Below, one piece after another: positions 299 to 17,694 of a DNA stretch of 64,000 bases (positions are counted from its first letter, which is position 1; each line of letters starts with the position of its first letter). The position numbers were made by a program, and so were the translations under genes. The notes under the pieces were generated by a model, which ran no database searches, was not told the origin of the DNA, and worked only from the letters and a program-made list of their open reading frames with translations. The stretch lies in the IMG/VR virus record IMGVR_UViG_3300012988_000001, positions 1-64,000 of that record; one strand, given 5' to 3'.

Positions 299-380
299 AG
301 TACTTGCATTACTCCCTGATAAGCGTATAATGATTTGCATAGGGGGAAACAACTTCCCCCGCTATTAAGAGAAACGAAAA
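299..380 (+). repeat. Promoter-stem-loop-RBS cassette (PeSL-like), copy 1
   Basis: AGTAC-TTGCAT N16 TATAAT, GGGGGAA-acaac-TTCCCCC hairpin, TAAGAGA RBS. Confidence 0.85.
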
Positions 381-827
381 ATGACTATCTACTACCTGAC
401 TTTCAAAACTCCAGACGGCAACGTAACCGACGCGAACGTAACCGCAAACACTGTACATGAAGCAATGGCAGTACTGCAAGCCGAAGAGAAAGAAGCCGTG
501 ATCGTGTCGGTAGTAGATACTGACACAAATCTGGAAACGGTCATTGATCACTTCAATTTTTACAAAGGCCGCCCGTTACAAGACTGGTATCATATCGAGA
601 TTGAGACTCGCCAACTACCAGAAGAACAACAGCACTTTGAGTTAGGTACTAGCATTTGGGTTACTACCAGTAAGCAAGTATTTTTCTGTTCACGTATTCA
701 CGTTGAAAAGCGTATTAAGATCGGTGCAGACTCTTACAGTGGTCTGTTCACTACCAATGAGCTTATGAATTGTAATTATGTCAGTACTAGCATTTGCCAG
801 AAGATTGGCGGCAGTATCTGGGCGTAA
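381..827 (+). CDS. Hypothetical early protein
   Basis: ORF behind its own cassette, followed by a hairpin terminator. Confidence 0.8.
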   Translation: MTIYYLTFKTPDGNVTDANVTANTVHEAMAVLQAEEKEAVIVSVVDTDTNLETVIDHFNFYKGRPLQDWYHIEIETRQLPEEQQHFELGTSIWVTTSKQVFFCSRIHVEKRIKIGADSYSGLFTTNELMNCNYVSTSICQKIGGSIWA

Positions 828-834
828 CGATAAC

Positions 835-960
835 ACAAGGGGAGGCAATGCTTCCCCTGTTTATTTGTACAGTACTAAATCCTATAGACGGACTGCTGCA
901 CCCTATGGGTTAGCTTGTTTTCATGAGATACATAATACAGGATTTGATCAGTACTGTCAA
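835..960 (-). ncRNA. CCCACAGGGTGC-family non-coding element, copy A (putative ~90 nt sRNA)
   Basis: Minus-strand TTGACA(955-960) N17 TATTAT(932-937); core at 897-909 (CCCATAGGGTGCA variant); GC hairpin at 839-857; no ORF with an RBS. Confidence 0.6.
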
Positions 961-1132
961 CATCTTTTTCAAATGAATTTAAACGCTCTGTATCGCTCTA
1001 TAAGCCGTTCAACGAATAAGGCAAGCAAACATATTAGGGCAGTACTTTAAACGCGTTATAGGCTTGCTGGTGGCGTTATGCTTTAGTACTGAAATATAAG
1101 GAAAATGAAAAAAGATTGTCAATCTCTTAAAA

Positions 1133-1307
1133 AGTACTTGACGGATGATCGCAGTACTGGCATAATGTATCACATAGAGCGGCGGGACAGGTTAACTTCC
1201 CTAAGTAGACAGCCAGTAAGTCAGACGAAAATCTGGTGTCGCACTGAAAGAAAGATTGAAAAGAGTTTTAAAAAGTACTTGACAAGCTGGTGGGAAATTG
1301 AGATAAT
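1133..1307 (+). promoter_or_regulatory. Tandem sigma70-type promoters upstream of gene 1358
   Basis: TTGACG(1138) N17 CATAAT(1161) and TTGACA(1279) N17 GATAAT(1302); the second has a Chi site in its spacer. Confidence 0.8.
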
Positions 1308-1357
1308 GACCCCGTAGACAGCAAACAACCTAACTAAACCTTAAGAGGAAATATACA

Positions 1358-1954
1358 ATGACTACTACTAACAACGCAACCGAAGCACGTGTAACCCTGA
1401 AATCTGCTCTTGAAGCTGGCGACGTAAAAGGCTTGGGTGCAATCCTCGCTAAAATCGGTGGCGATAAAGACGGCGTATCAAAATTGGGCTTGACTTTCTC
1501 CCTCGCAGTAACGGCGGCGAAAGATGTACTCAAAGATCAGGCTAAACAGGCCGCCCTTAACGCAGAAGCCGCAGCGAAACGCCGCGAAGATAAAAAGGCA
1601 GCACGTCAGGCAGAGATCGAAGCACAGAACGCAGAGATCAAGGCAGAGAAAGAAAACATGATCAAGTTCCTCATGGACACCGTGAACGGCCTCGGCCTTG
1701 ACCTTGAAGCGGCAGAAGTAGCAGCACAGGCAGCCGTTGACAAAAAATACGGCGTAAGCGAAAAGGCTAAAAAGTACACCTTTACCCGCGTGGCAGTGGT
1801 TGTAGACGGTAAAGAATACGATATGCCAACGTCCGGTAACATGGTTCAAGTGCTTAAAGATGCCATGACCAAAGGCGGCTACGCAACACACAAAGACTTC
1901 ATTCTTGCACACGCTAAAAACGCAGAAGAAGCCGCAGCAGCTTTCGCTGAATAA
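1358..1954 (+). CDS. Ala/Lys-rich coiled-coil protein, probably highly expressed
   Basis: GAGGA RBS, two promoters, own terminator, AAA/GCA/GGC-biased codons. Confidence 0.85.
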   Translation: MTTTNNATEARVTLKSALEAGDVKGLGAILAKIGGDKDGVSKLGLTFSLAVTAAKDVLKDQAKQAALNAEAAAKRREDKKAARQAEIEAQNAEIKAEKENMIKFLMDTVNGLGLDLEAAEVAAQAAVDKKYGVSEKAKKYTFTRVAVVVDGKEYDMPTSGNMVQVLKDAMTKGGYATHKDFILAHAKNAEEAAAAFAE

Positions 1955-1971
1955 GTCAAGTAATTAAAACT

Positions 1972-2000
1972 AAAAGCCTCGCATAATGTGGGGCTTTTTT
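1972..2000 (+). terminator. Intrinsic terminator
   Basis: AAAAGCCTCGCA-TAA-TGTGGGGCTTTTTT. Confidence 0.8.
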
Positions 2001-2020
2001 TATTATAAAAGATTGTAGAA

Positions 2021-2100
2021 AGTACTTGCAATACTTTTCTAGTACTGTATAATGGTTTGCATAGGGGGAAACAACTTCCCCACTAATTAAGGAAAGAATC
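2021..2100 (+). repeat. Promoter-stem-loop-RBS cassette, copy 2
   Basis: AGTACTTGCAA...AGTACTGTATAAT, GGGGGAA/TTCCCC hairpin, TAAGGA. Confidence 0.85.
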
Positions 2101-2466
2101 ATGACACCTTTACAACTGATGGCTGACTCTTATATCACGGCGATGCATTGGGCTAGTACTGATGAAAATGGTGATCCACTCGACAACTACCCTACAGCAG
2201 CAGAGGCAAAAGATATTGCGGCAACTACCTGCAATAACTTCCTGAAAGTCCACGGTGATGATCTATCAATCGTAATGGGGTTACATCCTCATTATGGTTA
2301 TGAGCAAGCGGGGCATGATTTGTTTTTGACTCGCGAAGGTCATGGGGCTGGTTTCTGGGATCGTGATCTTGGTCACTATGGGGACGTGTTTACAAAGTAC
2401 TGTCAATCTATTGGTACGGCTGATCCGTATGTGGGCGATGATGGTTTTGTTTACGTTAATGTTTAA
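2101..2466 (+). CDS. Conserved phage protein (GHDxxLTRxGHGAGFWDR motif)
   Basis: AGHDLFLTREGHGAGFWDRD motif, recalled from phage hypothetical proteins; function unknown. Confidence 0.75.
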   Translation: MTPLQLMADSYITAMHWASTDENGDPLDNYPTAAEAKDIAATTCNNFLKVHGDDLSIVMGLHPHYGYEQAGHDLFLTREGHGAGFWDRDLGHYGDVFTKYCQSIGTADPYVGDDGFVYVNV

Positions 2467-2467
2467 A

Positions 2468-2548
2468 AGTACTTGCATTACTTCTTAAGTACTGTATAAT
2501 GATTTGCATAGGGGGAAACATCTTCCCCCATTAATTAAGGAAATGAAA
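2468..2548 (+). repeat. Promoter-stem-loop-RBS cassette, copy 3
   Basis: Same consensus as copy 2. Confidence 0.85.
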
Positions 2549-2767
2549 ATGGATCTGAATATCAAGATCAACCTCACAGTGAAACAAGTCAATGGTGATG
2601 AAGTTCTCCCACACCACGTAGACGGCCTGCGAGAAAATGCCATTGCTTATATTCTGGAAATGGTTAGCGATGATTGCCGTGAAGGGGAATTTAATGAAGT
2701 AATGGAAAACATCTGTGATGATGAAGAAACAGAATATCGCGGGTACTGGTCGGTTGTAGAGGAATAA
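2549..2767 (+). CDS. Acidic hypothetical protein; paralogue of 11064..11303
   Basis: Shared EVLxHH..L.E.A...I..M...GE...Y.G.WSV pattern; start moved to the RBS-supported ATG. Confidence 0.75.
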   Translation: MDLNIKINLTVKQVNGDEVLPHHVDGLRENAIAYILEMVSDDCREGEFNEVMENICDDEETEYRGYWSVVEE

Positions 2768-3246: not shown

Positions 3247-3339
3247 CATCTTTTTTTCTGAATATTATTTGAAGAAAGTACTTGCATTACTTTTGCAGTA
3301 CTGTATAATACTTACATCAACCACAGAGAGGAAAGCAAA

Positions 3340-3561
3340 ATGACTAAGTACCTGATGGAAGTTTTTACTACTGAAAACGTAGCAACCAATGTAAAGCGTT
3401 ATTACAAGGTTGTTTGTGGTGTAGGCCGCAGAATCAGTAAGGCAGACTATCAGAAGCTGGAAGATAACGCGGAGGGGGCTTGCTGCTTTAGTACTGTAAA
3501 CACGAAAACCCATATTAAGCAATACAAAACTTTAGAGTTCTATACTGATTTAGTTTTGTAA
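3340..3561 (+). CDS. Hypothetical early protein
   Basis: Own promoter (3282-3309) and GAGGA RBS. Confidence 0.8.
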   Translation: MTKYLMEVFTTENVATNVKRYYKVVCGVGRRISKADYQKLEDNAEGACCFSTVNTKTHIKQYKTLEFYTDLVL

Positions 3562-3562
3562 A

Positions 3563-3642
3563 AGTACTTGCATTACTTCTTAAGTACTGTATAATGATTT
3601 GCATAGGGGGAACAACTTCCCCCACTAATTAAGGAAACGAAA
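3563..3642 (+). repeat. Promoter-stem-loop-RBS cassette, copy 4
   Basis: Promoter nearly identical to copy 3. Confidence 0.85.
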
Positions 3643-3867
3643 ATGGCACTTATCAAGATTATCGAATCAAACGTAGCAGGTCAAGAAAGCACTTTCATTG
3701 AATATGATACTGATTCGTTTGACGAACGTTATGCGGTGCAATACGGTGGATCTGGTATCACGTTCAATGGCACAAAGGAAGGTTGGAAATGTGCGGTTGA
3801 AGATTATTTGTCAAACGTTAAACACCAATTAGAAAGTGCCGCACAAGAAGGTGGCTACCTCGCATAA
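3643..3867 (+). CDS. Hypothetical early protein
   Basis: ORF behind cassette. Confidence 0.8.
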   Translation: MALIKIIESNVAGQESTFIEYDTDSFDERYAVQYGGSGITFNGTKEGWKCAVEDYLSNVKHQLESAAQEGGYLA

Positions 3868-3948: not shown

Positions 3949-4242
3949 ATGGCTAAGTATTGCAGAGAGTGCGGCGGGTTGTGTGTAGTAGATGATTTTG
4001 GTGTATCGAATCATATCTATGAAAACGGTGATATTCACCACGTGCTGGATGGTGATCATGTGGCTATCCCTGAGATGGAAGAAACATTGATCAATGAGGA
4101 AGTTTTCGACTTCTGCAAAGATCATTATGAATGTTTCAACGCATACCCTACTGAGTGCGAATTGTCAAACGGTGATGTTTATTCTTTTGCCGAAATGATG
4201 AAAGTACTTTCAGAGGAACAAAAGCAAGAAATTGAAAAATAG
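3949..4242 (+). CDS. Hypothetical protein with N-terminal CxxC
   Basis: CRECGG; own promoter TTGACA(3884) N17 CATAAT. Confidence 0.8.
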   Translation: MAKYCRECGGLCVVDDFGVSNHIYENGDIHHVLDGDHVAIPEMEETLINEEVFDFCKDHYECFNAYPTECELSNGDVYSFAEMMKVLSEEQKQEIEK

Positions 4243-4323
4243 TACTTGCATTACTTTCTGATTACTGTATAATGTTTTGCATAGGGGGAAACATCTTCCC
4301 CCATTAATTAAGAGAATAATATC
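4241..4323 (+). repeat. Promoter-stem-loop-RBS cassette, copy 5
   Basis: Consensus cassette. Confidence 0.85.
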
Positions 4324-4704
4324 ATGGCTAACCAAATCACTCCAGCACAGATCTTTAACAAGTACGAAATTCAGATTGTACTGGTAGAGTATGTTCCATC
4401 CTATGGATGGTCTGACGCTTGCGTAGCCGAAGATGTAGCCGATGCAAAGCGTATCATTAAAGAGTATGCCGCAGAAGGTATCAGCCTGAAAAGTGTTCGC
4501 CGCTGGGTGCTTAACAAAGATGCGTTTCTCTGTCAAGCCCTGTTGAACTTCTGCCGTGACTACTATCGCCGTACTGGTGGACTTTGGCCTAATGAGGTTG
4601 AAGTACTGAAAGCTAACGGGGTGAAGAAATTCACCTTGACTTTGAAAGAAATCGAAGAAGTACTGGGTAATGATTGCCGTTTAGTTACTTCTCAGGCAGT
4701 ATAA
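4324..4704 (+). CDS. Hypothetical early protein
   Basis: ORF behind cassette. Confidence 0.8.
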   Translation: MANQITPAQIFNKYEIQIVLVEYVPSYGWSDACVAEDVADAKRIIKEYAAEGISLKSVRRWVLNKDAFLCQALLNFCRDYYRRTGGLWPNEVEVLKANGVKKFTLTLKEIEEVLGNDCRLVTSQAV

Positions 4705-4769
4705 AAAGTACTTGACACTATACGGGGATATGATATTATATCCCCATCTTAAGCAAAGAAGGTAATACA

Positions 4770-6188: not shown

Positions 6189-6220
6189 CTACTTTTTAAT
6201 GAAAAGAATTTGAAAATAAT

Positions 6221-6298
6221 GCTTGCAGTACTTTTAAATTAGCGTATAATGTTTTGCATAGGGAGAGATAATCTTTCCCACTAATTAAGGAAATGAAA
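6221..6298 (+). repeat. Promoter-stem-loop-RBS cassette, copy 6
   Basis: TTGCAG..TATAAT; hairpin variant GGGAGA/TTTCCC. Confidence 0.8.
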
Positions 6299-6664
6299 AT
6301 GGAACGTATCGTTTATGGTCGTGGTGCAAGTGCTGAAGTTGTTCCTGTAGAACTGCTGGCGATGTTAACCGAAATGATTCGCCGTAGTGATATTAGTTTT
6401 CCTCCGTCCGTAATGCCGTATGCTATCAGCTACGAAGTACGCAAGACTCCTAAGTACTGGAAGATTGACCGTGTAGAACTGGATAAAGATACAGGAGAAA
6501 TCCGTCAATATGGGCGTAGCTCTGCTGGTGCTGTAGACTTTGACGGAAACGTGTTTAAGTCTGCTAGTTATAACGCGGTGGCTAAAGGTATTCGCGGGAA
6601 TATCTTTGTTAATAACGGATTTAATGCAATTACTGGTGATGGTTATATCCGTTATTTAAATTAA
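6299..6664 (+). CDS. Conserved phage protein (GNVFKSASYNAVAKGIRGNI motif)
   Basis: Motif resembles a widespread phage hypothetical family (G.v.K.AS..A.AK..R.N); function unknown. Confidence 0.75.
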   Translation: MERIVYGRGASAEVVPVELLAMLTEMIRRSDISFPPSVMPYAISYEVRKTPKYWKIDRVELDKDTGEIRQYGRSSAGAVDFDGNVFKSASYNAVAKGIRGNIFVNNGFNAITGDGYIRYLN

Positions 6665-6667
6665 GAA

Positions 6668-6750
6668 AGTACTTGCAAAGTAATCAAAACAGCGTATAAT
6701 GTTTTGCATAGGGGGAGATAAACTCCCCCACTATTAAGAGAAGAAATATC
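6668..6750 (+). repeat. Promoter-stem-loop-RBS cassette, copy 7
   Basis: Consensus cassette. Confidence 0.85.
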
Positions 6751-6990
6751 ATGGCACAGAAAATCACTCGCACCGAAGTTAATCATTATCTGGCAGTACT
6801 GAATGGTGTATTGGCAGCGATGGGTGCAAAGTATCGTTATAAATTGCAACCTGTTGCTGGTGGTTATACACTGGAGAAGTACAATACAGAGGGCGATCTG
6901 GTCGATACTTGTATTGGTGGTCAATCTTTACGTGCAGTATATGAGATCATTCGTTTTTCTGCAAACATGATCGGGGATAACGTGAAGTAA
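6751..6990 (+). CDS. Hypothetical early protein
   Basis: ORF behind cassette. Confidence 0.8.
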   Translation: MAQKITRTEVNHYLAVLNGVLAAMGAKYRYKLQPVAGGYTLEKYNTEGDLVDTCIGGQSLRAVYEIIRFSANMIGDNVK

Positions 6991-7038
6991 TTATTATCAA
7001 AAGTACTCTTGACAATACTTTGAGAGTACTTTATAATA
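6987..7038 (+). repeat. 52-bp promoter block identical to 10981-11032
   Basis: GTAATTATTATCAAAAGTACTCTTGACAATACTTTGAGAGTACTTTATAATA occurs at both sites. Confidence 0.85.
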
Positions 7039-7069
7039 CTTACATCACTTAAGCAAAGAGAGAAACAAA

Positions 7070-7378
7070 ATGGAAAAGACTAAACTGTTCGTAGCTCAGA
7101 TTACCCTGCGTCATGGCGAATATGAAACGCAAGTTCGAAAACTGATCCTTGCGAAGTCGCAAATTGAAGCCGAACTGTTCGCCCGTAGCAATGAAGGAAT
7201 GGCGATCTATGACGGCTCATGCATCGAAGATGGTAACAGCTATCAGGAAGAAGGTCAACCAAATACATGGTACTTCTGCGGCGGGGATTGGTGCGTTACT
7301 CTGGGCGTGATCTGGGAGATGGAAGATCGCGAAATGGCGAAACAAGTAATTGCTAGCGGCTTAGTATCTTTCTTGTAA
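7070..7378 (+). CDS. Hypothetical early protein
   Basis: Own promoter and RBS. Confidence 0.8.
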   Translation: MEKTKLFVAQITLRHGEYETQVRKLILAKSQIEAELFARSNEGMAIYDGSCIEDGNSYQEEGQPNTWYFCGGDWCVTLGVIWEMEDREMAKQVIASGLVSFL

Positions 7379-7390
7379 TTACTTTCAAAA

Positions 7391-7474
7391 AGTACTTGCA
7401 TTACTTTCTGATTACTGTATAATGTTTTACATAGAGAGGGGAAACGGTTCCCCTCCTAAATTAAGGAAAGTCCC
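7391..7474 (+). repeat. Promoter-stem-loop-RBS cassette, copy 8
   Basis: Hairpin variant GAGGGGAA-acgg-TTCCCCTC. Confidence 0.85.
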
Positions 7475-7900
7475 ATGAGCAACAAAGTTAACATGACCGG
7501 TTTCGCTAACGACGCAAATTCCCCTACCATCCGTGCAGAAGGGTTGATCGGTGAAACGCAAGTGTTTATCGAGTACGATAAACTTACTGGCACTATTGTT
7601 GACAGTACTTTCAGGGAGTCATCCGATCTGTTCAAAGATATGGATAAGCAAGCCCGTCAGATTCTGGTGTTTAAAGTTCCTGTAGATCTGGCTGGTGATT
7701 CTTACACAGTACGCCAGTACAATCAAATGAATGAATGGCATGACAAACTGAAAGCGGCTGAGAAAGTACTTTCAGAAATGGATCGCCTTGTTACTTCTGA
7801 GGACTGGATGTATAACCAGTTAGGCCAAACTACTGGAAGCATTATCGACGCATTAAACGAGGTACGCATTGCACTGGATGCCCGTATAAGCAATTTATAA
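7475..7900 (+). CDS. Hypothetical early protein
   Basis: ORF behind cassette. Confidence 0.8.
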   Translation: MSNKVNMTGFANDANSPTIRAEGLIGETQVFIEYDKLTGTIVDSTFRESSDLFKDMDKQARQILVFKVPVDLAGDSYTVRQYNQMNEWHDKLKAAEKVLSEMDRLVTSEDWMYNQLGQTTGSIIDALNEVRIALDARISNL

Positions 7901-7911
7901 AGTTTAAAAAG

Positions 7912-8015
7912 GGGTTGACTTCGGTTAGCCCTTTTGCTATTATATAGTCATTGGCAGATAAGCTACTAACCCACAGGGTGCAATAGTCTGTCTGTTAAAA
8001 AGATATTAGTACTTT
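7912..8015 (+). ncRNA. Terminator/promoter hybrid plus CCCACAGGGTGC element, copy E
   Basis: GGGTTGAC-TTCG-GTTAGCCC-TTTT; TTGACT N17 TATTAT; core 7970-7982; 45 nt identical to copy H. Confidence 0.6.
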
Positions 8016-8094: not shown

Positions 8095-8346
8095 ATGGAA
8101 GATTTTAAAATTGTTAAACAGTTCTCACTAGCACAGAAAGGTAATCAATTCTTCTGTACTATTTCACGTAGAGAAACCCCAAATACAGAAACTGGTCTGA
8201 CTTGGGAAGTGTTAAAACAGACTAACACAGAAAAGCCAGTACTTGAAACTTATGATCGTTATGCGATTGCGGAAATGGATTTTACTCACTACGTTATCGA
8301 GTCATTGAATACAGATCATTTTTATCAGTTTTCAGCAACAAAATAG
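8095..8346 (+). CDS. Hypothetical early protein
   Basis: Own promoter and GAGG RBS. Confidence 0.75.
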   Translation: MEDFKIVKQFSLAQKGNQFFCTISRRETPNTETGLTWEVLKQTNTEKPVLETYDRYAIAEMDFTHYVIESLNTDHFYQFSATK

Positions 8347-8423
8347 TTGACTTACTTCTGAATAAGCGTATAATGGTTTGCATAGGGGAGATAGTGTCTC
8401 CCCACTAATTAAGGAAATGAAAA
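8345..8423 (+). repeat. Promoter-stem-loop-RBS cassette, copy 9
   Basis: TTGACT..TATAAT; GGGGAGA-tagtg-TCTCCCC. Confidence 0.85.
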
Positions 8424-9310: not shown

Positions 9311-9541
9311 ATGTCAAATCGTGAAATCATTGCAACAGTACTGGTGCGTACACTGAATGCTTCGCGTTTAACCCAAGTTCGTAATATCGCCACTGCACAC
9401 GAAAACTGCTGGCGGGAGTTTTTGAATGGTAGTACTAGCTCACAGAATGCCGCTGATCATAAACTGACTGAGGCAGTTACTGCTGCGGTGGCAGAACTGG
9501 ATGATAAAGCAATTGAATATATTGCTACATTATTAAAATAA
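9311..9541 (+). CDS. Hypothetical early protein
   Basis: Own promoter with the -10 inside an inverted repeat (9263-9284). Confidence 0.75.
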   Translation: MSNREIIATVLVRTLNASRLTQVRNIATAHENCWREFLNGSTSSQNAADHKLTEAVTAAVAELDDKAIEYIATLLK

Positions 9542-9626
9542 GTACTTGCATTACTTCTGAATTCGCGTATAATGTTTTATATCGAGAGGGGGAAATGGTT
9601 CTCCCTCCGAACTTAAGGAAAGTATC
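9541..9626 (+). repeat. Promoter-stem-loop-RBS cassette, copy 11
   Basis: GAGAGGGGGAA-atgg-TTCTCCCTC variant. Confidence 0.85.
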
Positions 9627-9944
9627 ATGACTATCTCCAACGTTCAAGCTAACTTCGAAAACGAAATCATTGCTCAAGCCCTGCGTTTAGATGACGGTGT
9701 AGCAAGAATTAACTACGGTTTCAATTCAGGTGGTTACGAACAATATCAGTACTTCATTACTGCTGATGGCGGTATTCTGGGGATTAATACTGTGATGGTA
9801 AACATCCAGAGCATTAACTTCAATGATCCCGATGATAGCCAGTGGTACATTGTAGGGGTAGACGTGAACTATGAAGACGACACCCTAACCGATGACCACA
9901 CAGGGGAACGTCTGGAAAGTGCTTACGGCGAACCTGAAGAATAA
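9627..9944 (+). CDS. Conserved acidic phage protein
   Basis: GGYxxY..T.DGG.L...QW..VG.DVN.ED..L.DD.TGER.ESAYG pattern; function unknown. Confidence 0.8.
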   Translation: MTISNVQANFENEIIAQALRLDDGVARINYGFNSGGYEQYQYFITADGGILGINTVMVNIQSINFNDPDDSQWYIVGVDVNYEDDTLTDDHTGERLESAYGEPEE

Positions 9945-10162: not shown

Positions 10163-10702
10163 ATGATTACTACACTGTACCACGGCAGCAGCAATTTTGA
10201 CCACAGACCGGGTTACCTCGGCGGGAAGAAAGATAACTTTCAATACGGTGTAGGGCTGTACACTACCAACTCTTACAACTGGGCAGAACTTTACGGGCGA
10301 TCTGTGTATGCTCTTACAGTAGAACTGAATGAAGCACAACACGCGAACAACGTAGAAATTAGCATTGAAAATCTTATGTACTGGACTAAATGCTATTGCT
10401 CGCAAAAGGTTGCGAAGCTCTTTGTAAAAGAGTTTAGCCAACGCGAAACAATGTCAGGGCAGCGGTTTGAATTGTGGCTGTACTGGAATGTAAGACGCTT
10501 GCACTTGATTGCAAAAGAGTTAGCCGCTTTCTTTACTGCTCAAGGCATCACACACAACAGCGATGCGGGGAACTACGGCGGCAAACTGATCCGAATCTAT
10601 GATTTCGATATTATCACACAAAGCACTAAAGATAAGAAAGTACTTAAAGATCTACAATATGCAACAACAGAACTACCTCAATATATCTTAGAAAGGGCTT
10701 GA
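10163..10702 (+). CDS. Putative ADP-ribosyltransferase-fold protein
   Basis: TLYHGSS...GVGLYTT...YG..VY match ART strand motifs; own promoter. Confidence 0.5.
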   Translation: MITTLYHGSSNFDHRPGYLGGKKDNFQYGVGLYTTNSYNWAELYGRSVYALTVELNEAQHANNVEISIENLMYWTKCYCSQKVAKLFVKEFSQRETMSGQRFELWLYWNVRRLHLIAKELAAFFTAQGITHNSDAGNYGGKLIRIYDFDIITQSTKDKKVLKDLQYATTELPQYILERA

Positions 10703-10759
10703 CGGTATAACGGGGCTATTATATAATAGTCCCATATTAAGCAAACAAGGAATTAAATT

Positions 10760-10984
10760 ATGTCTCTGTACTCATTAGATATTCAAACACCAGATTTCAT
10801 CACTAAAATAATTGTATCATCGGAACAGCGAGAATTAGATGATGCAAAGGCTGAAGTTCTGGAATGGGCGAAAGGTTTTTATCCTGCTGGTACTAACTTA
10901 CAGGTAAAATGGATCTCGCACGAAACGAAAATTGATTTACATTATTTTGTATCAGGTGGTTATTCCGCTATTAAAATTCTGTAA
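10760..10984 (+). CDS. Hypothetical early protein
   Basis: Own promoter and RBS. Confidence 0.75.
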   Translation: MSLYSLDIQTPDFITKIIVSSEQRELDDAKAEVLEWAKGFYPAGTNLQVKWISHETKIDLHYFVSGGYSAIKIL

Positions 10985-11063
10985 TTATTATCAAAAGTAC
11001 TCTTGACAATACTTTGAGAGTACTTTATAATAATCACATCACTTAAGCAAAGAGGCAAGACAA

Positions 11064-11303
11064 ATGGAAAGAGTACTGAAAATCTCCTACAACTGGACTA
11101 ACAACGACAACGAAAGTGGTGAAGTTCTGGAGCATCATAAAGAGTACTTAGAAGAAAGTGCTTTTGACCGGATCGGTTATATGATGAAACAGGGCTACAC
11201 AAGCGGGGAATTGTCTGATAACATTCATTCGCAGGAAGATCCCGCAGATCATGAAGGTACTAGTTATAGTGGCTGGTGGTCTGTAAGTAAAGAGGATTCG
11301 TAA
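11064..11303 (+). CDS. Acidic hypothetical protein; paralogue of 2549..2767
   Basis: EVLEHHKEYLEESAFDRIGYM...GEL...YSGWWSV. Confidence 0.8.
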   Translation: MERVLKISYNWTNNDNESGEVLEHHKEYLEESAFDRIGYMMKQGYTSGELSDNIHSQEDPADHEGTSYSGWWSVSKEDS

Positions 11304-11453: not shown

Positions 11454-11546
11454 TTATTATCAAAAGTACTTGTATTACTGGAGCGAGTACTTTATAATAC
11501 TTACATCAACTAAGCAATAACGCTTAATTAAACCGAGGACAGGAAA

Positions 11547-11684
11547 ATGAAAGAATCTCAATACGAAGCAGTACTGGCACAGACTGGTGAAGACCTGACG
11601 CCTGAGCAGTACGCGAAAATTGAGGAACTGCTGCTGGCTGGTAAGTCGGTTAAAGACACTGTGAAAGCCGTCCGTAAAATGTAA
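11547..11684 (+). CDS. Small hypothetical protein (45 aa)
   Basis: Own promoter (~11465-11497), AGGA RBS. Confidence 0.6.
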   Translation: MKESQYEAVLAQTGEDLTPEQYAKIEELLLAGKSVKDTVKAVRKM

Positions 11685-11892
11685 TAAAGGGGCGTACAAT
11701 GATTAAACCAATAGATCCTATTGTACGCCTTTATTACAACACGTACAAACCATCAGATCTCAAAAGGCTGGTGGAGGAAAGAAAAGAAGTACAAAAAGAT
11801 TTAAAAAGTACTTGCAATAAAATCGATATCAAAGTATAATGTTTACATCAGCTAGGGAATGGTCCACTAGCTAACTAACAGGAAATAAAATC

Positions 11893-12258
11893 ATGGCTAT
11901 CATCTCCGCTTTCTTCTCTTCTCGTAAACTGGCTCGTGATGCTAAAGTTGATCTGGGTGGTAAGATTGTTGATAATGGTACAACCGCACCAGCGGGACAG
12001 CGTTGGGAACTCCAGTACGAAGCAGCCCCGAAATCAGCAGCCATCGCAGAACTGGCGGCGATCATGGAAGCTGAAGTAGTGGACATGAAACTTGAAGAGG
12101 TTAAACCTCGTGATCTGATGGGCTTGCCACGCCCTGTAAGTAAACACCAAACGGCTCGCGAATATGTACTCAAGGATCGCAAAAACAATCCGGTACGCGT
12201 ACAGGTTCGCCGCAGTAAAACCAATGCCCTGTTAGCCGCTCACATGGCGAAAGCATAA
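11893..12258 (+). CDS. Hypothetical early protein
   Basis: Own promoter TTGCAA N17 TATAAT, AGGA RBS, host-like codons. Confidence 0.85.
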   Translation: MAIISAFFSSRKLARDAKVDLGGKIVDNGTTAPAGQRWELQYEAAPKSAAIAELAAIMEAEVVDMKLEEVKPRDLMGLPRPVSKHQTAREYVLKDRKNNPVRVQVRRSKTNALLAAHMAKA

Positions 12259-12304
12259 CCGAACATGGGGGAGAACTTTCTCCCCCTCTTTTAAGAGAAA
12301 GAAC

Positions 12305-12556
12305 ATGAAAAAGAAAGTACAGTTAGTTAACGGTAGTTTCATGCGATTGCATTATAAACCCATTCAAAGAGTCATTGATCGAGGTGTAGAAGTAGCTAAT
12401 AAGTATGTACTAGGAGAGATCCGACCTCGCAAACTTAATAACGGAAAGTTTGAAGTACTGGAAGTTTCACGCACAGAACGTATTGTAATTGACAAAGACA
12501 AAAACATCCACTTTCTGAGCCACGAAAAGTACAATGATTTCATCGAAAAATATTGA
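12305..12556 (+). CDS. Hypothetical protein
   Basis: Preceded by a promoterless hairpin-RBS half-cassette (GGGGGAGAA/TTCTCCCCC). Confidence 0.75.
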   Translation: MKKKVQLVNGSFMRLHYKPIQRVIDRGVEVANKYVLGEIRPRKLNNGKFEVLEVSRTERIVIDKDKNIHFLSHEKYNDFIEKY

Positions 12557-12563
12557 TAAAAAA

Positions 12564-12645
12564 GGGTTGACTTCGGTTGGCCCTTTTGCTATTATATACG
12601 CATAGAAACAAACTAGCCCACAGGGTGCATAAATACGTCTATAAT
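12564..12645 (+). promoter_or_regulatory. Terminator/promoter hybrid plus CCCACAGGGTGC element, copy G (leader of gene 12666)
   Basis: TTGACT(12567) N17 TATTAT(12590); core 12617-12629. Confidence 0.65.
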
Positions 12646-13202: not shown

Positions 13203-13269
13203 AAAATAAAGGGTTGACTTCGGTTAGCCCTTTTGTTATTCTATCAGTACAACAACAGAGGACAACACA

Positions 13270-14142: not shown

Positions 14143-14412
14143 ATGGTTAAAACAGATTTAAACACGGTCCAATCATGGCACAAAGTCCAGTTAGACCAAC
14201 TGCCCCAACTTTTAAAAGATCAAGGGTTCCAATATGTAAAAGCATTCAGTACTGATGAACATAGAATCTTTGTATCACAGGATGGTAACTACAAATTGAT
14301 TATACATAAAAACGTAGGGAAACTATATCCTACTAAAAATAATCAGTGCTTGCACACATTTGCAATTGTTGCACCAATGCCAAAATTAAATGACGTTAAA
14401 AGGGTTGACTAA
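14143..14412 (+). CDS. Hypothetical protein
   Basis: AAGGAG RBS. Confidence 0.75.
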   Translation: MVKTDLNTVQSWHKVQLDQLPQLLKDQGFQYVKAFSTDEHRIFVSQDGNYKLIIHKNVGKLYPTKNNQCLHTFAIVAPMPKLNDVKRVD

Positions 14413-14461
14413 GGTCGGCCCTTTTGCTATTATAACTACATCGAAACGAAGGAGTTAAATC

Positions 14462-15052
14462 ATGTACGTCACTAAAGCAGCCAAAGCACATCTTAAAGCA
14501 CTGGACCTGTTACCTACTAATAACCAAATGCTTAAGTACTGTAGAGAGAATCTTACTCGTTTGGGTAAAGGTTCTAGTCGTGAAGTGTTTGCACTCTCCG
14601 ATACGCTGGTGGTCAAGGTGGCACTGGGCGGCGTAGGTGTGAAGCAGAACGAGAATGAGATCCGAGTGTGGAATCTCGTCAGCTATGACTACATCGGAAT
14701 GAAACGTTCCTTTGCTAAAGTACTGGTAAATGAAGGACACTGGAAGGACTTCTATATTGTAATGGAACGTCTGGAAACTAACACAGTGTCACGCAGCATC
14801 TTTAATACTAAAACAGTGCAGCAATGGCGTACTGATCGCAAAGCAATGCATCCTACTGCCAAGCGTATTTTTAAAGATGTACAAGACACCGACGACAACG
14901 CGTTTACCAATAACATTGCAGACATTACGCCTCGCAATATGGGAACATCAAAATCAGGTGTTGTCAAGATGCTTGACTATGGTTTTAGTACTCCCATATG
15001 GAATGGTATCGCGAAAGGCAAACTAAAAAATCGCGAATTACTTATTCGTTAG
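14462..15052 (+). CDS. Protein-kinase-like (Ser/Thr kinase fold) protein
   Basis: LGKGSSREVF Gly loop, VVKVA Lys, NENE Glu, VMERL hinge, DITPRNMG catalytic loop, LDYG (DFG-like). Confidence 0.75.
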   Translation: MYVTKAAKAHLKALDLLPTNNQMLKYCRENLTRLGKGSSREVFALSDTLVVKVALGGVGVKQNENEIRVWNLVSYDYIGMKRSFAKVLVNEGHWKDFYIVMERLETNTVSRSIFNTKTVQQWRTDRKAMHPTAKRIFKDVQDTDDNAFTNNIADITPRNMGTSKSGVVKMLDYGFSTPIWNGIAKGKLKNRELLIR

Positions 15053-15113
15053 TACTTGACAGATAATAGCTGGTGGGATATAATTATCCCATCAACTACA
15101 GAGGAAAGCAATC

Positions 15114-15335: not shown

Positions 15336-15661
15336 CAAAAGAAAGGGTTGACTTCGGTCGGCCCTTTTGTTATTATATCAGTACATCCAAAGGGGGACAT
15401 ATGAAATATATTTTGATGGTAGGTATGATGATTTTATATCAACGCCAAACAGCATTCCCATTGCTGGGAATTATTGCAATTCTTACTGGTTTATTGATTT
15501 GGAGATGGTAACATGGCTAAGGTCACGATTGAAACAGTAAAAGAAACCATTAAGTTAATGGATGAATTGAACGGCACGGATCATTATAATACTATTGATT
15601 GGGATAATCCCAGTACTGAATTACCTGCTTTCTTAACTGATAAGAAAGATGATAAAAAGGA

Positions 15662-15760: not shown

Positions 15761-16153
15761 ATTGTAAATGATCTTGACCGCCGAGGCAATTTGATCAATA
15801 ATTGATCAAGAAATTTTAGAGTACTGGATTATGGTTGAAATTATGAAACAATATGGTAATGTATTACTGAAAACGGAGAACGACTATTATGTAGTAAGAT
15901 CGGGCCGCGAAAGTATTCAAACACAAAACGCTTTCCATGCTCTGGTATGGTATGCAAAATTTATCATGAAGGAAAACAAATGAGAATACCTGCTCTTATC
16001 CTTCTAGTACTCGTCGTGCTGTATGTAGCTAATGCTATACAGGATGAAAGCAGTATTCAGTACTGGAATGAAATGAAATATTATTGGAATAAGTCTTGAC
16101 ATAGCTGGTGGACTATCCTATAATATATACATCTTAACAAAGAGGATTACCAA

Positions 16154-16333
16154 ATGGTACACGTAGATCTGGAAGTACAAAAGAAAGTCTGGTACGATAT
16201 CGGCCTGAAAGGTATTAACTGGTCTGACGCTCAATACGCTGCACTCAAAGCACTTGACCGTTATCAACGTGAACAAGTACTTGAGGCACACAAGAAAGGT
16301 GTGAATGACCGCATCGATCTTGAAGTACTGTAA
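16154..16333 (+). CDS. Small hypothetical protein (59 aa)
   Basis: Own promoter with Chi in the spacer, GAGGA RBS, terminator at 16341-16378. Confidence 0.7.
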   Translation: MVHVDLEVQKKVWYDIGLKGINWSDAQYAALKALDRYQREQVLEAHKKGVNDRIDLEVL

Positions 16334-16450
16334 ATCCTAAAAGGCCAATAACACATTGGCCTTTTTTTCGTTTATACACTAAATCAATTACGATTTCAAG
16401 AAATTTTAGAAAGTACTTTAAATCGAAAATAGTTTATATAAATTTCAGAA

Positions 16451-16536
16451 AGTACTTGCAATCAATATTAGAAAGCGTATAATGTATTACATCGAGAGGG
16501 GAAATGGTTCTACTCTCAAACGTTAAGGAAATGATT
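16451..16536 (+). repeat. Promoter-stem-loop-RBS cassette, copy 12
   Basis: GAGAGGGGAA..TTCTACTCTC variant. Confidence 0.8.
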
Positions 16537-17067
16537 ATGTACTCTTCAGTTCAAACTATGGTTAACGTCAACGCTGCTACTGGTATCGCTTATGGTTACA
16601 TCAACGCTAACAATGTAAACGGTGATGTACTGCATGATATCTTCTGCAATGGCATCGATTCACGCAGATTAGAATGTGATATCGAGTTTGCTTCAAAACA
16701 TGGTTTCGTTACTCCTGAGCAGGAAGAGAATGAATTATTCAGTACTTACCTCGCTCGCATTCAAGATGTAATGCTTGACTTCCTTAACAATCTGCAAGAT
16801 GAGGAAGGTAATGATCTCACAGAACTGGTGGAAGAACATGATCGCCAGTACGAAGAGTTTACAGGTGATATCCACGTAGCAACAATCGATGACACTACTG
16901 TTATCTATAACACTGACAGTAATACTATCTGCGTGATGGATAGCAAAACTGTAGGGAAGTACTTCTTATGCTCCCCTTGCTGCCCTAACGCTGGTGATTT
17001 GGATAGTGCTGGTGGCGATGTAGAAACTTACGATGTACCAGCTAGCTGGCGTGAAATGGACTACTAA
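16537..17067 (+). CDS. Acidic conserved phage protein (C-terminal CSPCCPNAGDLD)
   Basis: ORF behind cassette. Confidence 0.8.
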   Translation: MYSSVQTMVNVNAATGIAYGYINANNVNGDVLHDIFCNGIDSRRLECDIEFASKHGFVTPEQEENELFSTYLARIQDVMLDFLNNLQDEEGNDLTELVEEHDRQYEEFTGDIHVATIDDTTVIYNTDSNTICVMDSKTVGKYFLCSPCCPNAGDLDSAGGDVETYDVPASWREMDY

Positions 17068-17103
17068 TATAGCGAATGAGCGATGATATGTCAAGTCTAA
17101 AAA

Positions 17104-17186
17104 AGTACTTGCAATCATCGCTCAGTACTGTATAATGATTTGCATAGGGAGAGAATAGTTTTCTCCCAATAGTAAGGAATACTGTT
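17104..17186 (+). repeat. Promoter-stem-loop-RBS cassette, copy 13
   Basis: GGGAGAGAA-tagtt-TTCTCCC variant. Confidence 0.85.
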
Positions 17187-17471
17187 ATGTTTAACGGTCA
17201 TATTGCAAACTTCGCATTACGTCGCGGTGTAGAGATTCAAGTAGTCGAAGCAAATGAAATCGACAATGAATACAATGAATTGTGGTTCTACGCCGCAGAC
17301 AATGACTGTGAGCCAGAAATGATGTACATCCAAAACAATGATGGTACTTTATCATTCAAAGGTAAGTTAAACAAATCACTTGAAGATCTGCCAGCGTGGA
17401 TCGATAGCAAAGATAAACTGAAAAAAGTTATCTGCTATCTGTCAGATATGCTCGCTGCCGAAGCAATGTAA
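17187..17471 (+). CDS. Hypothetical early protein
   Basis: ORF behind cassette. Confidence 0.8.
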   Translation: MFNGHIANFALRRGVEIQVVEANEIDNEYNELWFYAADNDCEPEMMYIQNNDGTLSFKGKLNKSLEDLPAWIDSKDKLKKVICYLSDMLAAEAM

Positions 17472-17483
17472 TCTTTACAAAAC

Positions 17484-17585
17484 AGTACTGGACATAACAA
17501 GCCAGTACTGTTAATATGTAGTCATTGGCAGATAAGCCGTAGCCCACAGGGTGCAGAGATCCGTCTATAGCTTTTAAGTACTAAT
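17484..17585 (+). ncRNA. CCCACAGGGTGC element, copy I
   Basis: TGGACA(17489) N17 TAATAT; core 17543-17555 then TCCGTCTATAG. Confidence 0.55.
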
Positions 17586-17607
17586 TAATTTTAAAAAGAA
17601 TGTAGAA

Positions 17608-17694
17608 AGTACTTGCAAGGTAGTTTGGTTAGTGTATAATGTTTTACATCGAGAGGGGGAAATGGTTCTCCCTCCGGTCACTAGGAGATTCACC
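17608..17694 (+). repeat. Promoter-stem-loop-RBS cassette, copy 14
   Basis: Leader nearly identical to copy 11. Confidence 0.85.

What the first reader, a model, noticed from the sequence alone, without database searches (positions are those of the whole stretch)
299..17694. Array of single-gene cassettes delimited by repeated promoter-stem-loop-RBS units (PeSL-like shuffling platform)
Seen: 14 copies of an ~80 bp unit (AGTACTTGCA...TATAAT-gntttgcatag-GGGGGAA-N4/5-TTCCCCC-actaattAAGGA), each followed by an unrelated small ORF. There is also a promoterless half-unit near 12266. Hairpin arms covary (GGGGAGA/TCTCCCC, GAGGGGAA/TTCCCCTC, GGGAGAGAA/TTCTCCC), which supports a 5' RNA stem. Identical blocks recur at distant sites (6987-7038 = 10981-11032; a 45-nt leader in E and H) with mixed promoter and leader halves. 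Established: PeSL elements of RB49-like T4 relatives promote modular gene shuffling. Inference: an independent integrase-free cassette system for swapping anti-host genes, possibly driven by the nearby Chi sites.
Basis: partly seen in the sequence, partly recalled or inferred. Interest (0 to 1): 0.62.

Follow-up and report, generated by a model that had tools for sequence, protein, structure and literature searches.

The report
Promoter-hairpin gene cassettes in jumbo phage
The early-gene end of a 366-kb jumbo phage holds 14 copies of one host-type promoter, RNA hairpin and ribosome-site unit, each driving a small unrelated gene, and related phages show genes gained, lost, replaced and moved exactly at these units, as known for PeSL elements of T4-type phages.

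Summary
A covariance model of the unit finds exactly 14 copies in the whole 366,160-bp genome, all on the + strand between 326 and 17,697. There is also one variant (11807) and one promoterless half-unit (12262).

Each unit has an A-rich/AGTAC stretch, a -35 box (TTGCAT), a 16-nt spacer and a TATAAT box. A probable start at CAT follows, then a 7-11 bp G/C hairpin about 3 nt later, an AU-rich spacer, a Shine-Dalgarno site and ATG. Across 68 copies in six related phages the stem is 95% paired. All 7 pairs show compensatory changes and 22 cells are G-U, so it is an RNA structure in the 5' leader. It has no U-tract and is not a terminator.

The phage is a Rak2/PBECO4-like jumbo myovirus. In every complete relative the unit occurs only inside the roughly 20-kb direct terminal repeat.

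Relatives differ by single-cassette indels flanked by duplicated units, exact ORF replacements between conserved units, translocations and leader swaps. Gene order is scrambled only inside the array.

No integrase is encoded; a RecA/UvsX-like gene is. This is a PeSL-type shuffling platform in a new lineage. The anti-host role of the genes and a driving role for Chi remain unproven.

The parts
297..383 (+). class A unit u297; drives ORF 381-827 (148 aa, DUF7300), then terminator 838-858
   Evidence: R1 67.7 bits; leader hairpin -12.7 kcal/mol; Pfam
2019..2103 (+). class A unit u2019; drives ORF 2101-2466 (121 aa), absent from the near relatives
   Evidence: R1 70.1 bits; hairpin -11.2; synteny; homologues in unrelated phages
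2466..2551 (+). class A unit u2466; drives ORF 2549-2767, then zinc-finger gene 2770-3030 and 3027-3131
   Evidence: R1 80.2 bits; hairpin -12.8; 54 nt identical to u3561; zf-dskA_traR
3561..3645 (+). class A unit u3561; drives ORF 3643-3867 (74 aa), replaced by another ORF in G001
   Evidence: R1 74.0 bits; hairpin -12.6; ORF replacement between conserved flanks
4239..4326 (+). class A unit u4239; drives ORF 4324-4704 (126 aa)
   Evidence: R1 71.3 bits; promoter half shared with u7389 (38 nt), leader half with u8696 (49 nt)
6216..6301 (+). class A unit u6216; drives ORF 6299-6664 (121 aa)
   Evidence: R1 75.2 bits; hairpin -11.0 with one G-U pair
6666..6753 (+). class A unit u6666; drives ORF 6751-6990 (79 aa)
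   Evidence: R1 64.7 bits; hairpin -14.6; a contig of run X12 joins this promoter to a u7389-type leader
7389..7477 (+). class A unit u7389 (longer stem); drives ORF 7475-7900 (141 aa)
   Evidence: R1 60.3 bits; hairpin -16.5; ORF 98% identical in G001 while its neighbour is 59%
8340..8426 (+). class A unit u8340; drives ORF 8424-8696 (90 aa), a cassette found at three different places in three lineages
   Evidence: R1 67.8 bits; synteny; contigs of X8 and X12 lack this cassette
8696..8781 (+). class A unit u8696; drives ORF 8779-9246 (155 aa)
   Evidence: R1 73.8 bits; hairpin -12.8; right-hand repeat of the u8340 cassette indel
9539..9629 (+). class A unit u9539 (11-bp bulged stem); drives ORF 9627-9944 (105 aa), then terminator 9951-9969
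   Evidence: R1 58.0 bits; hairpin -17.8; G001 has an extra cassette here flanked by a 59-nt repeat
16449..16539 (+). class A unit u16449 (stem with one mismatch); drives ORF 16537-17067 (176 aa)
   Evidence: R1 56.4 bits; hairpin -9.4; order with ORF 16154-16333 is inverted in the fENko-Kae01 group
17102..17189 (+). class A unit u17102; drives ORF 17187-17471 (94 aa), replaced by another ORF in G001
   Evidence: R1 61.1 bits; hairpin -15.7; replacement starts at the ATG; homologues in unrelated phages
17606..17697 (+). class A unit u17606; drives ORF 17695-18093 (132 aa), last unit of the array
   Evidence: R1 47.1 bits; hairpin -17.1; same stem type as u9539 (29 nt identical)
11807..11895 (+). 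variant unit with the same promoter and an unrelated 9-bp leader hairpin; drives ORF 11893-12258
   Evidence: alignment A1; hairpin -11.2; found by the regex-plus-fold scan, not by R1
12262..12307 (+). promoterless half-unit: hairpin 12267-12286 with a T-run, SD, ATG of ORF 12305-12556
   Evidence: fold -19.2; terminator-like; 88-90% conserved in PBECO4-like phages
7908..7943 (+). class B composite: terminator hairpin that contains the -35 box, T-run in the spacer, -10 TATTAT
   Evidence: repeat family D5; terminator scan, 12 pairs
12560..12595 (+). class B composite in front of ORF 12666-13202 (virion-protein PHROG)
   Evidence: family D5 reference copy
13208..13242 (+). class B composite in front of ORF 13270-13551
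   Evidence: family D5 at 75%; 11-pair stem
14398..14433 (+). class B composite in front of kinase-like ORF 14462-15052
   Evidence: family D5; promoter 10 of 12; annotated as a kinase in relatives
15341..15376 (+). class B composite in front of small membrane-like ORF 15401-15511
   Evidence: family D5; 12-pair stem with T-run
4705..4745 (+). class C composite: inverted repeat laid over the -10 box; drives ORF 4770-4961
   Evidence: family D17; fold of the promoter -13.2; the same class flanks the Munch_012 indel
9243..9285 (+). class C composite; drives ORF 9311-9541
   Evidence: families D15 and D17; 84-90% conserved in many PBECO4-like phages
10692..10735 (+). class C composite; drives ORF 10760-10984
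   Evidence: families D15 and D17; promoter fold -12.2
15049..15090 (+). class C-like composite with a Chi site in the spacer; drives ORF 15114-15335
   Evidence: 12 of 12 promoter match; Chi at 15069
3270..3342 (+). class D unit (promoter and conserved unstructured leader, no hairpin); drives ORF 3340-3561
   Evidence: families D6 and D10; cassette absent from G001 with a 35-nt repeat overlap
6987..7072 (+). class D unit; drives ORF 7070-7378
   Evidence: family D12; 52 nt identical to 10981-11032
10981..11066 (+). class D unit; drives ORF 11064-11303 (paralogue of ORF 2549-2767)
   Evidence: family D12 at 92% over 90 nt; paralogy
11455..11549 (+). class D unit; drives ORF 11547-11684 (45 aa, 96% conserved in relatives)
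   Evidence: families D10 and D16; synteny

Best explanation
The region is the host-polymerase-transcribed early region of a Rak2/PBECO4-like jumbo myovirus. By homology it is that phage's direct terminal repeat of about 20 kb.

It holds about 35 co-oriented sigma-70-type promoters. Fourteen of them belong to one standard expression unit: an A-rich/AGTAC upstream element, -35 TTGCAT, a 16-nt spacer, TATAAT (often preceded by TG), a probable start at the A of CAT, a 7-11 bp G/C hairpin 1-3 nt from the RNA 5' end, an unpaired AU-rich spacer, SD and ATG.

Shown: the hairpin is selected as an RNA structure on the + strand. It is not followed by a U-tract.

Inferred: it acts as a 5'-terminal stabiliser and insulator of the mRNA, like the ompA and T7 gene 10 leaders. 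Any ORF placed behind a unit would then be expressed strongly and early.

The whole intergenic space from stop codon to next ATG is the unit, and the units share 38-54 nt exact stretches. They are therefore dispersed direct repeats on which general homologous recombination acts, using the phage's RecA/UvsX-like protein or host RecA. The result is deletion, insertion, replacement, translocation and leader or promoter swaps of single cassettes.

Shown by comparison of relatives: breakpoints fall inside the units, at varying positions. This fits homologous rather than site-specific exchange.

The array therefore works like the PeSL regulatory cassettes of T4-type phages.
For: Anatomy and number.

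RNA structure: 95% of 361 cells are paired. All 7 pairs show compensatory change. There are 56 double-change cells against 18.4 +/- 4.2 in shuffles. Slid controls pair at 55-80%. 22 cells are G-U. The SD is left unpaired in most folds. The hairpins are not called as + strand terminators.

Identity of the phage and the terminal repeat: and PMC11218385. The unit is confined to the terminal repeat in fENko-Kae01, fEgEco12, Munch, G001 and G002. It occurs at 302 places in 56 jumbo-phage records.

Recombination at units:
- Five of 7 differences between fENko-Kae01 and Munch are 166-273 nt single-cassette indels flanked by a duplicated unit (37-91 nt overlap). One is an exact ORF swap between conserved units.
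- Window against G001: cassette indels with repeat overlaps at 3309/3561 and 9595/9537, and ORF replacements right after the ATG of u3561 and u17102.
- Neighbouring cassettes are 98/59/98/95/61/84% identical to G001.
- g8424 sits at three different sites in three lineages.
- A 2,477-nt contig of run X8 is 99.6% identical over 8929-10920 but lacks the u8340 cassette.

Localisation of the shuffling: gene order against fEgEco12 gives Kendall tau 0.99 outside the array (n = 21) and 0.40-0.49 inside (n = 16 and 11).

Recombination genes: a RecA-family gene lies at 216 kb. No integrase or resolvase was found.
Against: - No transcript data. The start site, and hence the 5'-terminal position of the hairpin, is inferred from the -10 spacing and the CAT motif only.
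- No measurement of mRNA stability or translation.
- Nearly all intergenic DNA in this region is a unit. Enrichment of breakpoints in units therefore cannot be separated from selection against breaking genes. The duplicated-unit signature is the stronger argument.
- No circles or intramolecular deletions were seen. The 'goes back' joints have short sides and are explained by cross-mapping of paralogous units.
- The terminal-repeat status of this genome rests on homology. The assembly is circular with a 123-bp overlap.
Confidence: 0.72

Rival explanations
1. Canonical PeSL reading: the stem-loop is a terminator or attenuator that stops transcription arriving from the upstream cassette, so each gene is an isolated transcription unit.
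For: PeSL stem-loops act as terminators in RB49/phi1, and one of the five PeSL subclasses has the stem-loop downstream of the -10 box. Cassettes abut with no other terminator between them. The half-unit at 12262 and the five class B elements do have T-runs and score as terminators.
Against: None of the 14 class A hairpins is followed by a U-tract, and none is called as a + strand terminator. The stem starts about 10 nt after the -10 box, so it is also part of the unit's own transcript. The spacing to -10 and to the SD is fixed, which points to a leader function.
Confidence: 0.12
2. The hairpin, or the inverted repeat in DNA, is the binding site of a phage or host regulator: a repressor, a translational repressor or a nuclease. 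The regulator would shut off or time the terminal-repeat genes as a group.
For: The unit occurs only in the terminal repeat in all genomes, as expected of a regulon mark. The flanks of the stem (TTTGCATA before it, ACTAATTAAGGA after it) are more conserved than the stem.
Against: Stem sequence and loop vary freely while pairing is kept, and 22 G-U cells would be mismatches in DNA. This argues against sequence-specific DNA recognition of the repeat. No candidate regulator was identified.
Confidence: 0.12
3. The units are ordinary promoters with no role in genome change. The cassette differences arise from illegitimate recombination and selection that only lets intergenic breakpoints survive.
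For: Units fill almost all intergenic space, so breakpoints that survive must lie in them. One difference in the same region is an HNH homing-endonuclease insertion with no unit involved.
Against: Five of 7 events between fENko-Kae01 and Munch keep one copy of a duplicated 37-91 nt unit, and one junction is a chimera of the two flanking units. Exact 38-54 nt blocks are shared between distant units with mixed halves. Order is scrambled only here.
Confidence: 0.06
4. A site-specific cassette system of the integron type, with the hairpin as the recombination site.
For: It is an array of single-gene cassettes separated by imperfect inverted repeats.
Against: No tyrosine or serine recombinase is found in the genome. 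The repeat carries its own promoter and sits 5' of the gene. Crossover points vary within the unit: promoter spacer, leader, ATG.
Confidence: 0.02

Closest known systems
PeSL (promoter-early stem-loop) cassettes of T4-type phages RB49/phi1, PST/T4, nt-1/KVP40 (PMC2839356, PMC4122927)
   Same: - Near-consensus sigma-70 promoter with an AT-rich upstream part.
- Adjacent G-tract/C-tract stem-loop.
- SD and ATG at the 3' end.
- Clustered among ORFans in a plastic region.
- Indels, replacements and displaced ORFs between relatives end in the elements.
- No dedicated recombinase.
- Classes B and C here match the PeSL subclasses with the stem over the -35 or -10 box.
   Different: - No sequence similarity to T4-type PeSLs was found; a blastn search with one unit hits only jumbo phages of this clade plus a few ~51-kb and ~145-kb phage records.
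- The host lineage is a Rak2-like jumbo phage.
- The array is confined to the direct terminal repeat.
- The main (class A) stem lies in the transcribed leader, has no U-tract and shows RNA-level covariation.
- Mini-circles have not been shown.
5'-terminal stabilising hairpins of ompA mRNA and of T7 late mRNAs such as the gene 10 leader (own knowledge, not tested here)
   Same: A G/C stem within a few nucleotides of the RNA 5' end, followed by an unstructured AU-rich stretch and a strong SD.
   Different: Here it is repeated 14 times as a module in front of unrelated genes and read by the host polymerase. The function is inferred only.
Integron gene cassettes (attC sites and IntI)
   Same: An array of single-gene cassettes with structured repeats between them; a source of adaptive accessory genes.
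   Different: There is no integrase. The repeat is 5' of the gene and brings its own promoter and RBS. Crossovers are not at one fixed point.
Early regions of Rak2-like phages as described for vB_PcaM_CBB (PMC5259590)
   Same: RpoD-like promoters with an UP-like element, concentrated among short hypothetical ORFs and reaching into the terminal repeat.
   Different: That paper does not mention stem-loops, repeated leaders or cassette exchange (no occurrence of 'stem-loop', 'hairpin' or 'PeSL').

Membership tests
PeSL regulatory cassette | Strong sigma-70-like early promoter with an AT-rich upstream region | tested here: met
   -35 TTGCAT or TTGACA, 16-17 nt spacer, TATAAT, A-rich/AGTAC upstream; invariant columns in A1
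PeSL regulatory cassette | Adjacent stable stem-loop, often a poly-G then a poly-C tract | tested here: met
   GGGGGAA/TTCCCCC-type stems of -9.4 to -17.8 kcal/mol; covariation
PeSL regulatory cassette | Stem-loop placed upstream of, within or just after the promoter boxes, before the transcription start | tested here: inconclusive
   Class B (over -35) and class C (over -10) fit. Class A starts about 10 nt after the -10 box, i.e. beyond the expected start. The start site itself was not mapped.
PeSL regulatory cassette | Stem-loop works as a terminator or attenuator | not testable with these tools
   The sequence argues against it for class A (no U-tract) and for it in class B and the half-unit. 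A reporter assay is needed.
PeSL regulatory cassette | SD and start codon of the downstream ORF at the 3' end; ORFans; located in a plastic region | tested here: met
   Gene order is scrambled only in this region.
PeSL regulatory cassette | Insertions, deletions and replacements between close relatives end in the elements | tested here: met
   fENko-Kae01 against Munch; window against G001; contigs of X8 and X12
PeSL regulatory cassette | Excised mini-circles formed between neighbouring elements | not testable with these tools
   Only assembled contigs were available. The 'goes back' joints were cross-mapping. Inverse PCR or long reads are needed.
PeSL regulatory cassette | Occurs in T4-like myoviruses | tested here: inconclusive
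   The phage is Rak2/PBECO4-like. That clade groups with T4-like phages only by portal and capsid trees (PMC5259590). No sequence homology to known PeSLs was detected.
Integron | IntI tyrosine recombinase next to the array | tested here: not met
   PF00589 and PF00239 have no match in the 366-kb genome, while the control genomes are positive
Integron | Promoterless cassettes with attC at the 3' end | tested here: not met
   Each repeat carries a promoter and RBS and lies 5' of its ORF
Intrinsic terminator | G/C hairpin followed directly by a U-run | tested here: not met
   The class A stems are followed by ACTAATTAAGGA-type sequence. None is in the + strand terminator list.
5'-terminal mRNA stabiliser hairpin (ompA / T7 gene 10 type) | Stem within a few unpaired nucleotides of the RNA 5' end | tested here: inconclusive
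   If the start is the A of the conserved CAT, 8 nt after the -10 box, then 1-3 nt are unpaired. No 5' end data.
5'-terminal mRNA stabiliser hairpin (ompA / T7 gene 10 type) | Structure selected at the RNA level | tested here: met
   95% paired, 7 of 7 pairs compensatory, 22 G-U cells, controls lower
5'-terminal mRNA stabiliser hairpin (ompA / T7 gene 10 type) | Lengthens mRNA half-life | not testable with these tools
   Needs rifampicin chase or reporter assays

The most novel reading that the evidence does not exclude
The terminal repeat of Rak2-like jumbo phages may be a dedicated, self-renewing 'first-in' module. In this reading the class A leader hairpin is a terminal-repeat-specific RNA tag read by a phage or host factor, for example for timed shut-off. 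The roughly 35 co-oriented strong promoters help pull or commit the incoming DNA. The co-oriented Chi cluster makes the repeat both RecBCD-proof and a recombination hot spot. Together these would form a promoter-bearing, integrase-free analogue of an integron that captures foreign ORFs from co-infecting phages.
Probability: 0.15. Interest if true: 0.75.

Novelty: new member of a known kind. Interest (0 to 1): 0.5.

Why it matters
- It extends the PeSL idea, in which regulatory repeats act as recombination handles for accessory genes, from T4-type phages to the large Rak2/PBECO4 clade of jumbo phages used in phage therapy work.
- It shows that in this clade the platform coincides with the direct terminal repeat.
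- It gives a simple marker for the early region and terminal repeat of such genomes: the class A leader, which can be searched with a covariance model.
- It provides a well-supported, uncatalogued 5' leader RNA motif (no Rfam match). The motif could be tested as a portable strong-expression part.
- It marks which small ORFs are the fast-changing, probably host-adaptive ones.

Tried and rejected
- Rfam scan of 1-20,000 at E <= 1: only four chance-level hits, none at the units.
- Read laying on 6150-12150 (6,001 bases; contigs only). Most joints have sides of 23-46 nt and come from paralogous units elsewhere in the genome. For example, 8747 to 6277 is the u2019 leader. They are therefore no evidence for circles or duplications. 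Only the long bridging contigs of X8 and X12 were used.
- No RNA run held the stretch, so expression and start sites could not be checked.
- Search for a near-identical sequenced relative. The phage collection gives at best about 80% identity over 23% of the region. IMG/VR gave G001 and the fragment G002. The single metagenome scan returned the window's own contig, one 2-kb contig without similarity, and one record that is not held.
- Pfam and PHROGs on 30 array proteins: almost nothing with a known function.
- Atlas search for g9627: no hit.
- g10163: Pfam DUF3990 only below the cut-off, no PDB sequence match, Foldseek not significant. The ADP-ribosyltransferase reading rests on feature similarity of 0.94 and on a VIA list dominated by ART folds at Z 4-5. 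It is a lead, not a finding.
- The CCCACAGGGTGCA motif: no conserved structure or covariation.
- Integron and site-specific models were rejected.

Full report
**What the window is.** The window is the first 64 kb of a single 366,160-bp virus contig. Its ends overlap by 123 bp, so the assembly is circular and any terminal repeat is collapsed. Megablast places it among the Rak2/PBECO4/121Q-like jumbo myoviruses of enterobacteria. The nearest records are Klebsiella phage fENko-Kae01 and the Salmonella phages Munch, 7t3/SE_PL and PHA46, but only 23% of 299-17,694 aligns, at about 80% identity. In fENko-Kae01 the homologous stretch is the 19,736-bp direct terminal repeat defined by PhageTerm (PMC11218385). 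By homology the repeat-equivalent here runs from about genome position 364.0 kb, where the first promoters appear, to about window position 18.4-18.5 kb.

**The observation.**
- A strict pattern hits 9 times against 0.01 expected.
- Repeat finding and alignment give 14 units of 85-92 nt.
- A covariance model built from the leaders finds exactly 14 matches in the window and in the whole genome. All are on the + strand between 326 and 17,697.
- A looser regex-plus-fold scan adds the variant at 11,812 and one look-alike at 261,361.
- The half-unit at 12,262 exists. Unlike the others it has a T-run and looks like a terminator.
- The identical blocks (52 nt at 6987 and 10981; 49, 54 and 38 nt between class A units) and the mixing of promoter and leader halves are confirmed.
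- Twelve of the 14 units precede a single gene. The ORFs are 72-176 aa and unrelated to one another, apart from one paralogue pair.

**Anatomy.** The upstream stop codon usually lies in or next to the A-rich/AGTAC element, so the unit is the entire intergenic space. The order is: -35 TTGCAT or TTGCAA (once TTGACT); a 16-nt spacer that often ends in AGTACTG, giving an extended -10; TATAAT; a conserved G-N-TTTGCAT or GTTTTACAT; the stem; an AU-rich ACTAATTAAGGA or ACTATTAAGAGA with the SD; and ATG 5-9 nt later.

If transcription starts at the A of CAT, 8 nt after the -10 box, the stem begins 1-3 nt from the 5' end. That position is usual for sigma-70 promoters, but this is inference.

**The hairpin is an RNA structure.** In the window, 5 of 7 pairs show compensatory change. 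With 68 copies from the window and five relatives (52 distinct):
- 95% of cells pair.
- All 7 pairs have double changes, in 56 cells against 18.4 +/- 4.2 in shuffles.
- Sliding the partner by 1-3 columns drops pairing to 55-80%.
- 22 cells are G-U, which pair in + strand RNA but not in DNA or the opposite strand.

The stems are not followed by U-runs and are not called as terminators, whereas other elements in the region are. Rfam has no matching family.

**Other composite promoters in the same array.**
- Class B (five copies) is a 12-pair terminator hairpin that contains the -35 box, with its T-run in the spacer.
- Class C (four copies) has an inverted repeat over the -10 box.
- Class D (four copies) has a conserved unstructured leader.

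Classes B and C correspond to PeSL subclasses described for RB49/phi1. Class A resembles the subclass with the stem after the -10 box but lies further downstream.

**Distribution.** The class A unit occurs only inside the terminal repeat in every complete relative:
- 10 copies in each repeat of fENko-Kae01
- 19 copies in each repeat of fEgEco12
- 10 in Munch
- 11 within 17.3 kb of G001
- 12 within 18.3 kb of the fragment G002

A blastn search with one unit hits 302 places in 56 records. Nearly all are 310-386 kb phages of Escherichia, Salmonella, Klebsiella, Erwinia, Serratia and Yersinia.

The CBB paper noted RpoD-like promoters with UP elements in this part of a Rak2-like genome, but not stem-loops or shuffling. 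I found no paper describing these units.

**Do cassettes move? Close relatives of each other.** fENko-Kae01 and Munch are 96-98% identical where they align and differ by seven events in this region.
- Five events are 166-273 nt single-cassette indels. The longer genome has the unit on both sides and the shorter keeps one copy (37-91 nt overlap), in one case a visible chimera.
- One event is an exact ORF replacement, from the third codon to the stop, between conserved units.
- One event is an HNH endonuclease insertion.

**Do cassettes move? The window against G001.** Most shared segments are about 75-85% identical (range 64-95%). The pattern is the same:
- u2019-g2101 and u2466-g2549 are absent from G001.
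- g3340 and g3949 are absent from G001 with repeat overlaps.
- G001 has an extra cassette at u9539, flanked by a 59-nt repeat.
- The ORFs behind u3561 and u17102 are replaced, starting at the ATG.

Neighbouring cassettes differ sharply in identity to G001 (98, 59, 98, 95, 61, 84%). This indicates allele replacement cassette by cassette.

**Do cassettes move? Translocations and other samples.**
- g8424 sits after g8095 in the window, after the zinc-finger gene in the fENko-Kae01 group, and before it in G002.
- The g15513 block is elsewhere in G001.
- g16154 and g16537 are in inverted order in the fENko-Kae01 group.
- A 2,477-nt contig of run X8 is 99.6% identical to 8929-10920 yet lacks the u8340-g8424 cassette.
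- A contig of X12 joins the u6666 promoter to a u7389-type leader in front of g6751.

**Do cassettes move? A distant relative as control.** Against the distant fEgEco12, 16 array genes have homologues in scrambled order (Kendall tau 0.40; 0.49 with 11 stricter hits). The 21 shared genes of window 34.8-64 kb are colinear (tau 0.99).

Crossover points vary: the promoter spacer, the leader, the ATG. The genome has a RecA/UvsX-like gene and no integrase or resolvase. Homologous recombination between units is therefore the best-supported mechanism.

**What stays open.**
- The genes are almost all of unknown function, so 'anti-host' is a reasonable guess only.
- g2101 and g17187 have homologues in unrelated phage families, in line with a shared mobile pool.
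- g10163 may have an ADP-ribosyltransferase fold of the DUF3990/AcrIF11 kind, on weak evidence.
- The Chi cluster is real but its role is untested.
- No transcript, half-life, circle or terminal-repeat read-depth data could be obtained.

**Verdict.** The PeSL-like reading is largely right, with three amendments:
- The array is the terminal-repeat early region of a Rak2-like jumbo phage.
- The main hairpin is a 5' leader RNA element rather than a terminator.
- The exchange is by general homologous recombination.

It is a new member of a known kind, of moderate interest.

Noticed in passing
window 1066, 1286, 6856, 10055, 11272, 11767, 14086, 14605, 15069, 16104, 17008, 18128 (+ strand); 3232, 5468, 12944, 13065 (- strand): There is a dense cluster of Chi sites (GCTGGTGG), co-oriented with transcription: 12 in 18.2 kb against 0.13 expected, plus 2 more just upstream at genome 364 kb. 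Three lie inside promoter spacers (1286, 15069, 16104). The genome as a whole has 36 on the + strand and 21 on the - strand against about 2 expected per strand. Similar clusters occur in the terminal repeats of fEgEco12, fENko-Kae01, Munch and G001, but not in G002. Top-strand Chi is read by RecBCD entering from the right, so the right-hand repeat copy would be protected and made recombinogenic. That last point is inference.
   Followed up: partly
whole genome; 98 copies in window 1-20000: The palindrome AGTACT occurs 910 times in 366 kb against about 121 expected. It is the most over-represented hexamer. It falls in all three codon phases (326/157/255) and in non-coding DNA (172), so selection acts on the DNA. 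It is about 15-fold enriched in the terminal-repeat regions of all relatives and sits twice in the promoters, before the -35 box and before the TG of the -10 box. Its function is unknown.
   Followed up: partly
window + strand 7950-8003, 12598-12650, 15697-15750, 17522-17576; - strand 872-925, 3160-3212, 6103-6155, 9983-10036: Eight copies of a conserved motif of about 45 nt, with an invariant core CCCA(C/T)AGGGTGC, lie about 20-50 nt downstream of a promoter, four in each orientation. Most are in 250-nt non-coding blocks behind terminators. One lies in the leader of ORF 12666-13202. The motif is also present in relatives. It has no Rfam match, no covariation and no stable fold. It may be a protein-binding site or a small-RNA family.
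   Followed up: partly
window 18572-19099: An HNH homing endonuclease gene (HNH_3 and NUMOD4 domains) lies just beyond the presumed right end of the terminal repeat. Related HNH genes are inserted at other places of the array in Munch and G001.
   Followed up: partly
window 10163-10702: A 179-aa early protein begins with an LYHGS motif. Its language-model neighbours are ART-PolyVal, DUF3990 and AcrIF11 clusters (score 0.94). The VIA-align list for its model (pLDDT 77) is dominated by ADP-ribosyltransferase folds at Z 4-5, with AcrIF11 (6kyf) at Z 5.2. The best hit, Z 8.8, is a cyanophage A4 pre-ejectosome protein. It is possibly a host- or defence-modifying ADP-ribosyltransferase.
   Followed up: partly
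window 2770-3030 and 14462-15052: A DksA/TraR-type C4 zinc-finger protein and a protein annotated as a kinase in relatives are the best-conserved backbone genes of the array. They are likely host take-over functions.
   Followed up: no
window 12666-13202: An ORF inside the early array matches a 'virion structural protein' PHROG. Its fENko-Kae01 homologue was detected in virions by mass spectrometry according to that record's note. It may be a packaged, possibly injected, protein encoded in the terminal repeat.
   Followed up: no
class A versus other promoters, window 297-17697: All 14 class A promoters have a 16-nt spacer, and 13 of them have -35 TTGCA(T/A/G). Most of the hairpin-less classes use TTGAC(A/T) with 17 nt. 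These may be two temporal or strength classes.
   Followed up: no
genome 216198-216959 (outside the window): A RecA/UvsX-like recombinase gene lies in a 393-aa open frame. No tyrosine or serine recombinase is found anywhere in the genome.
   Followed up: partly
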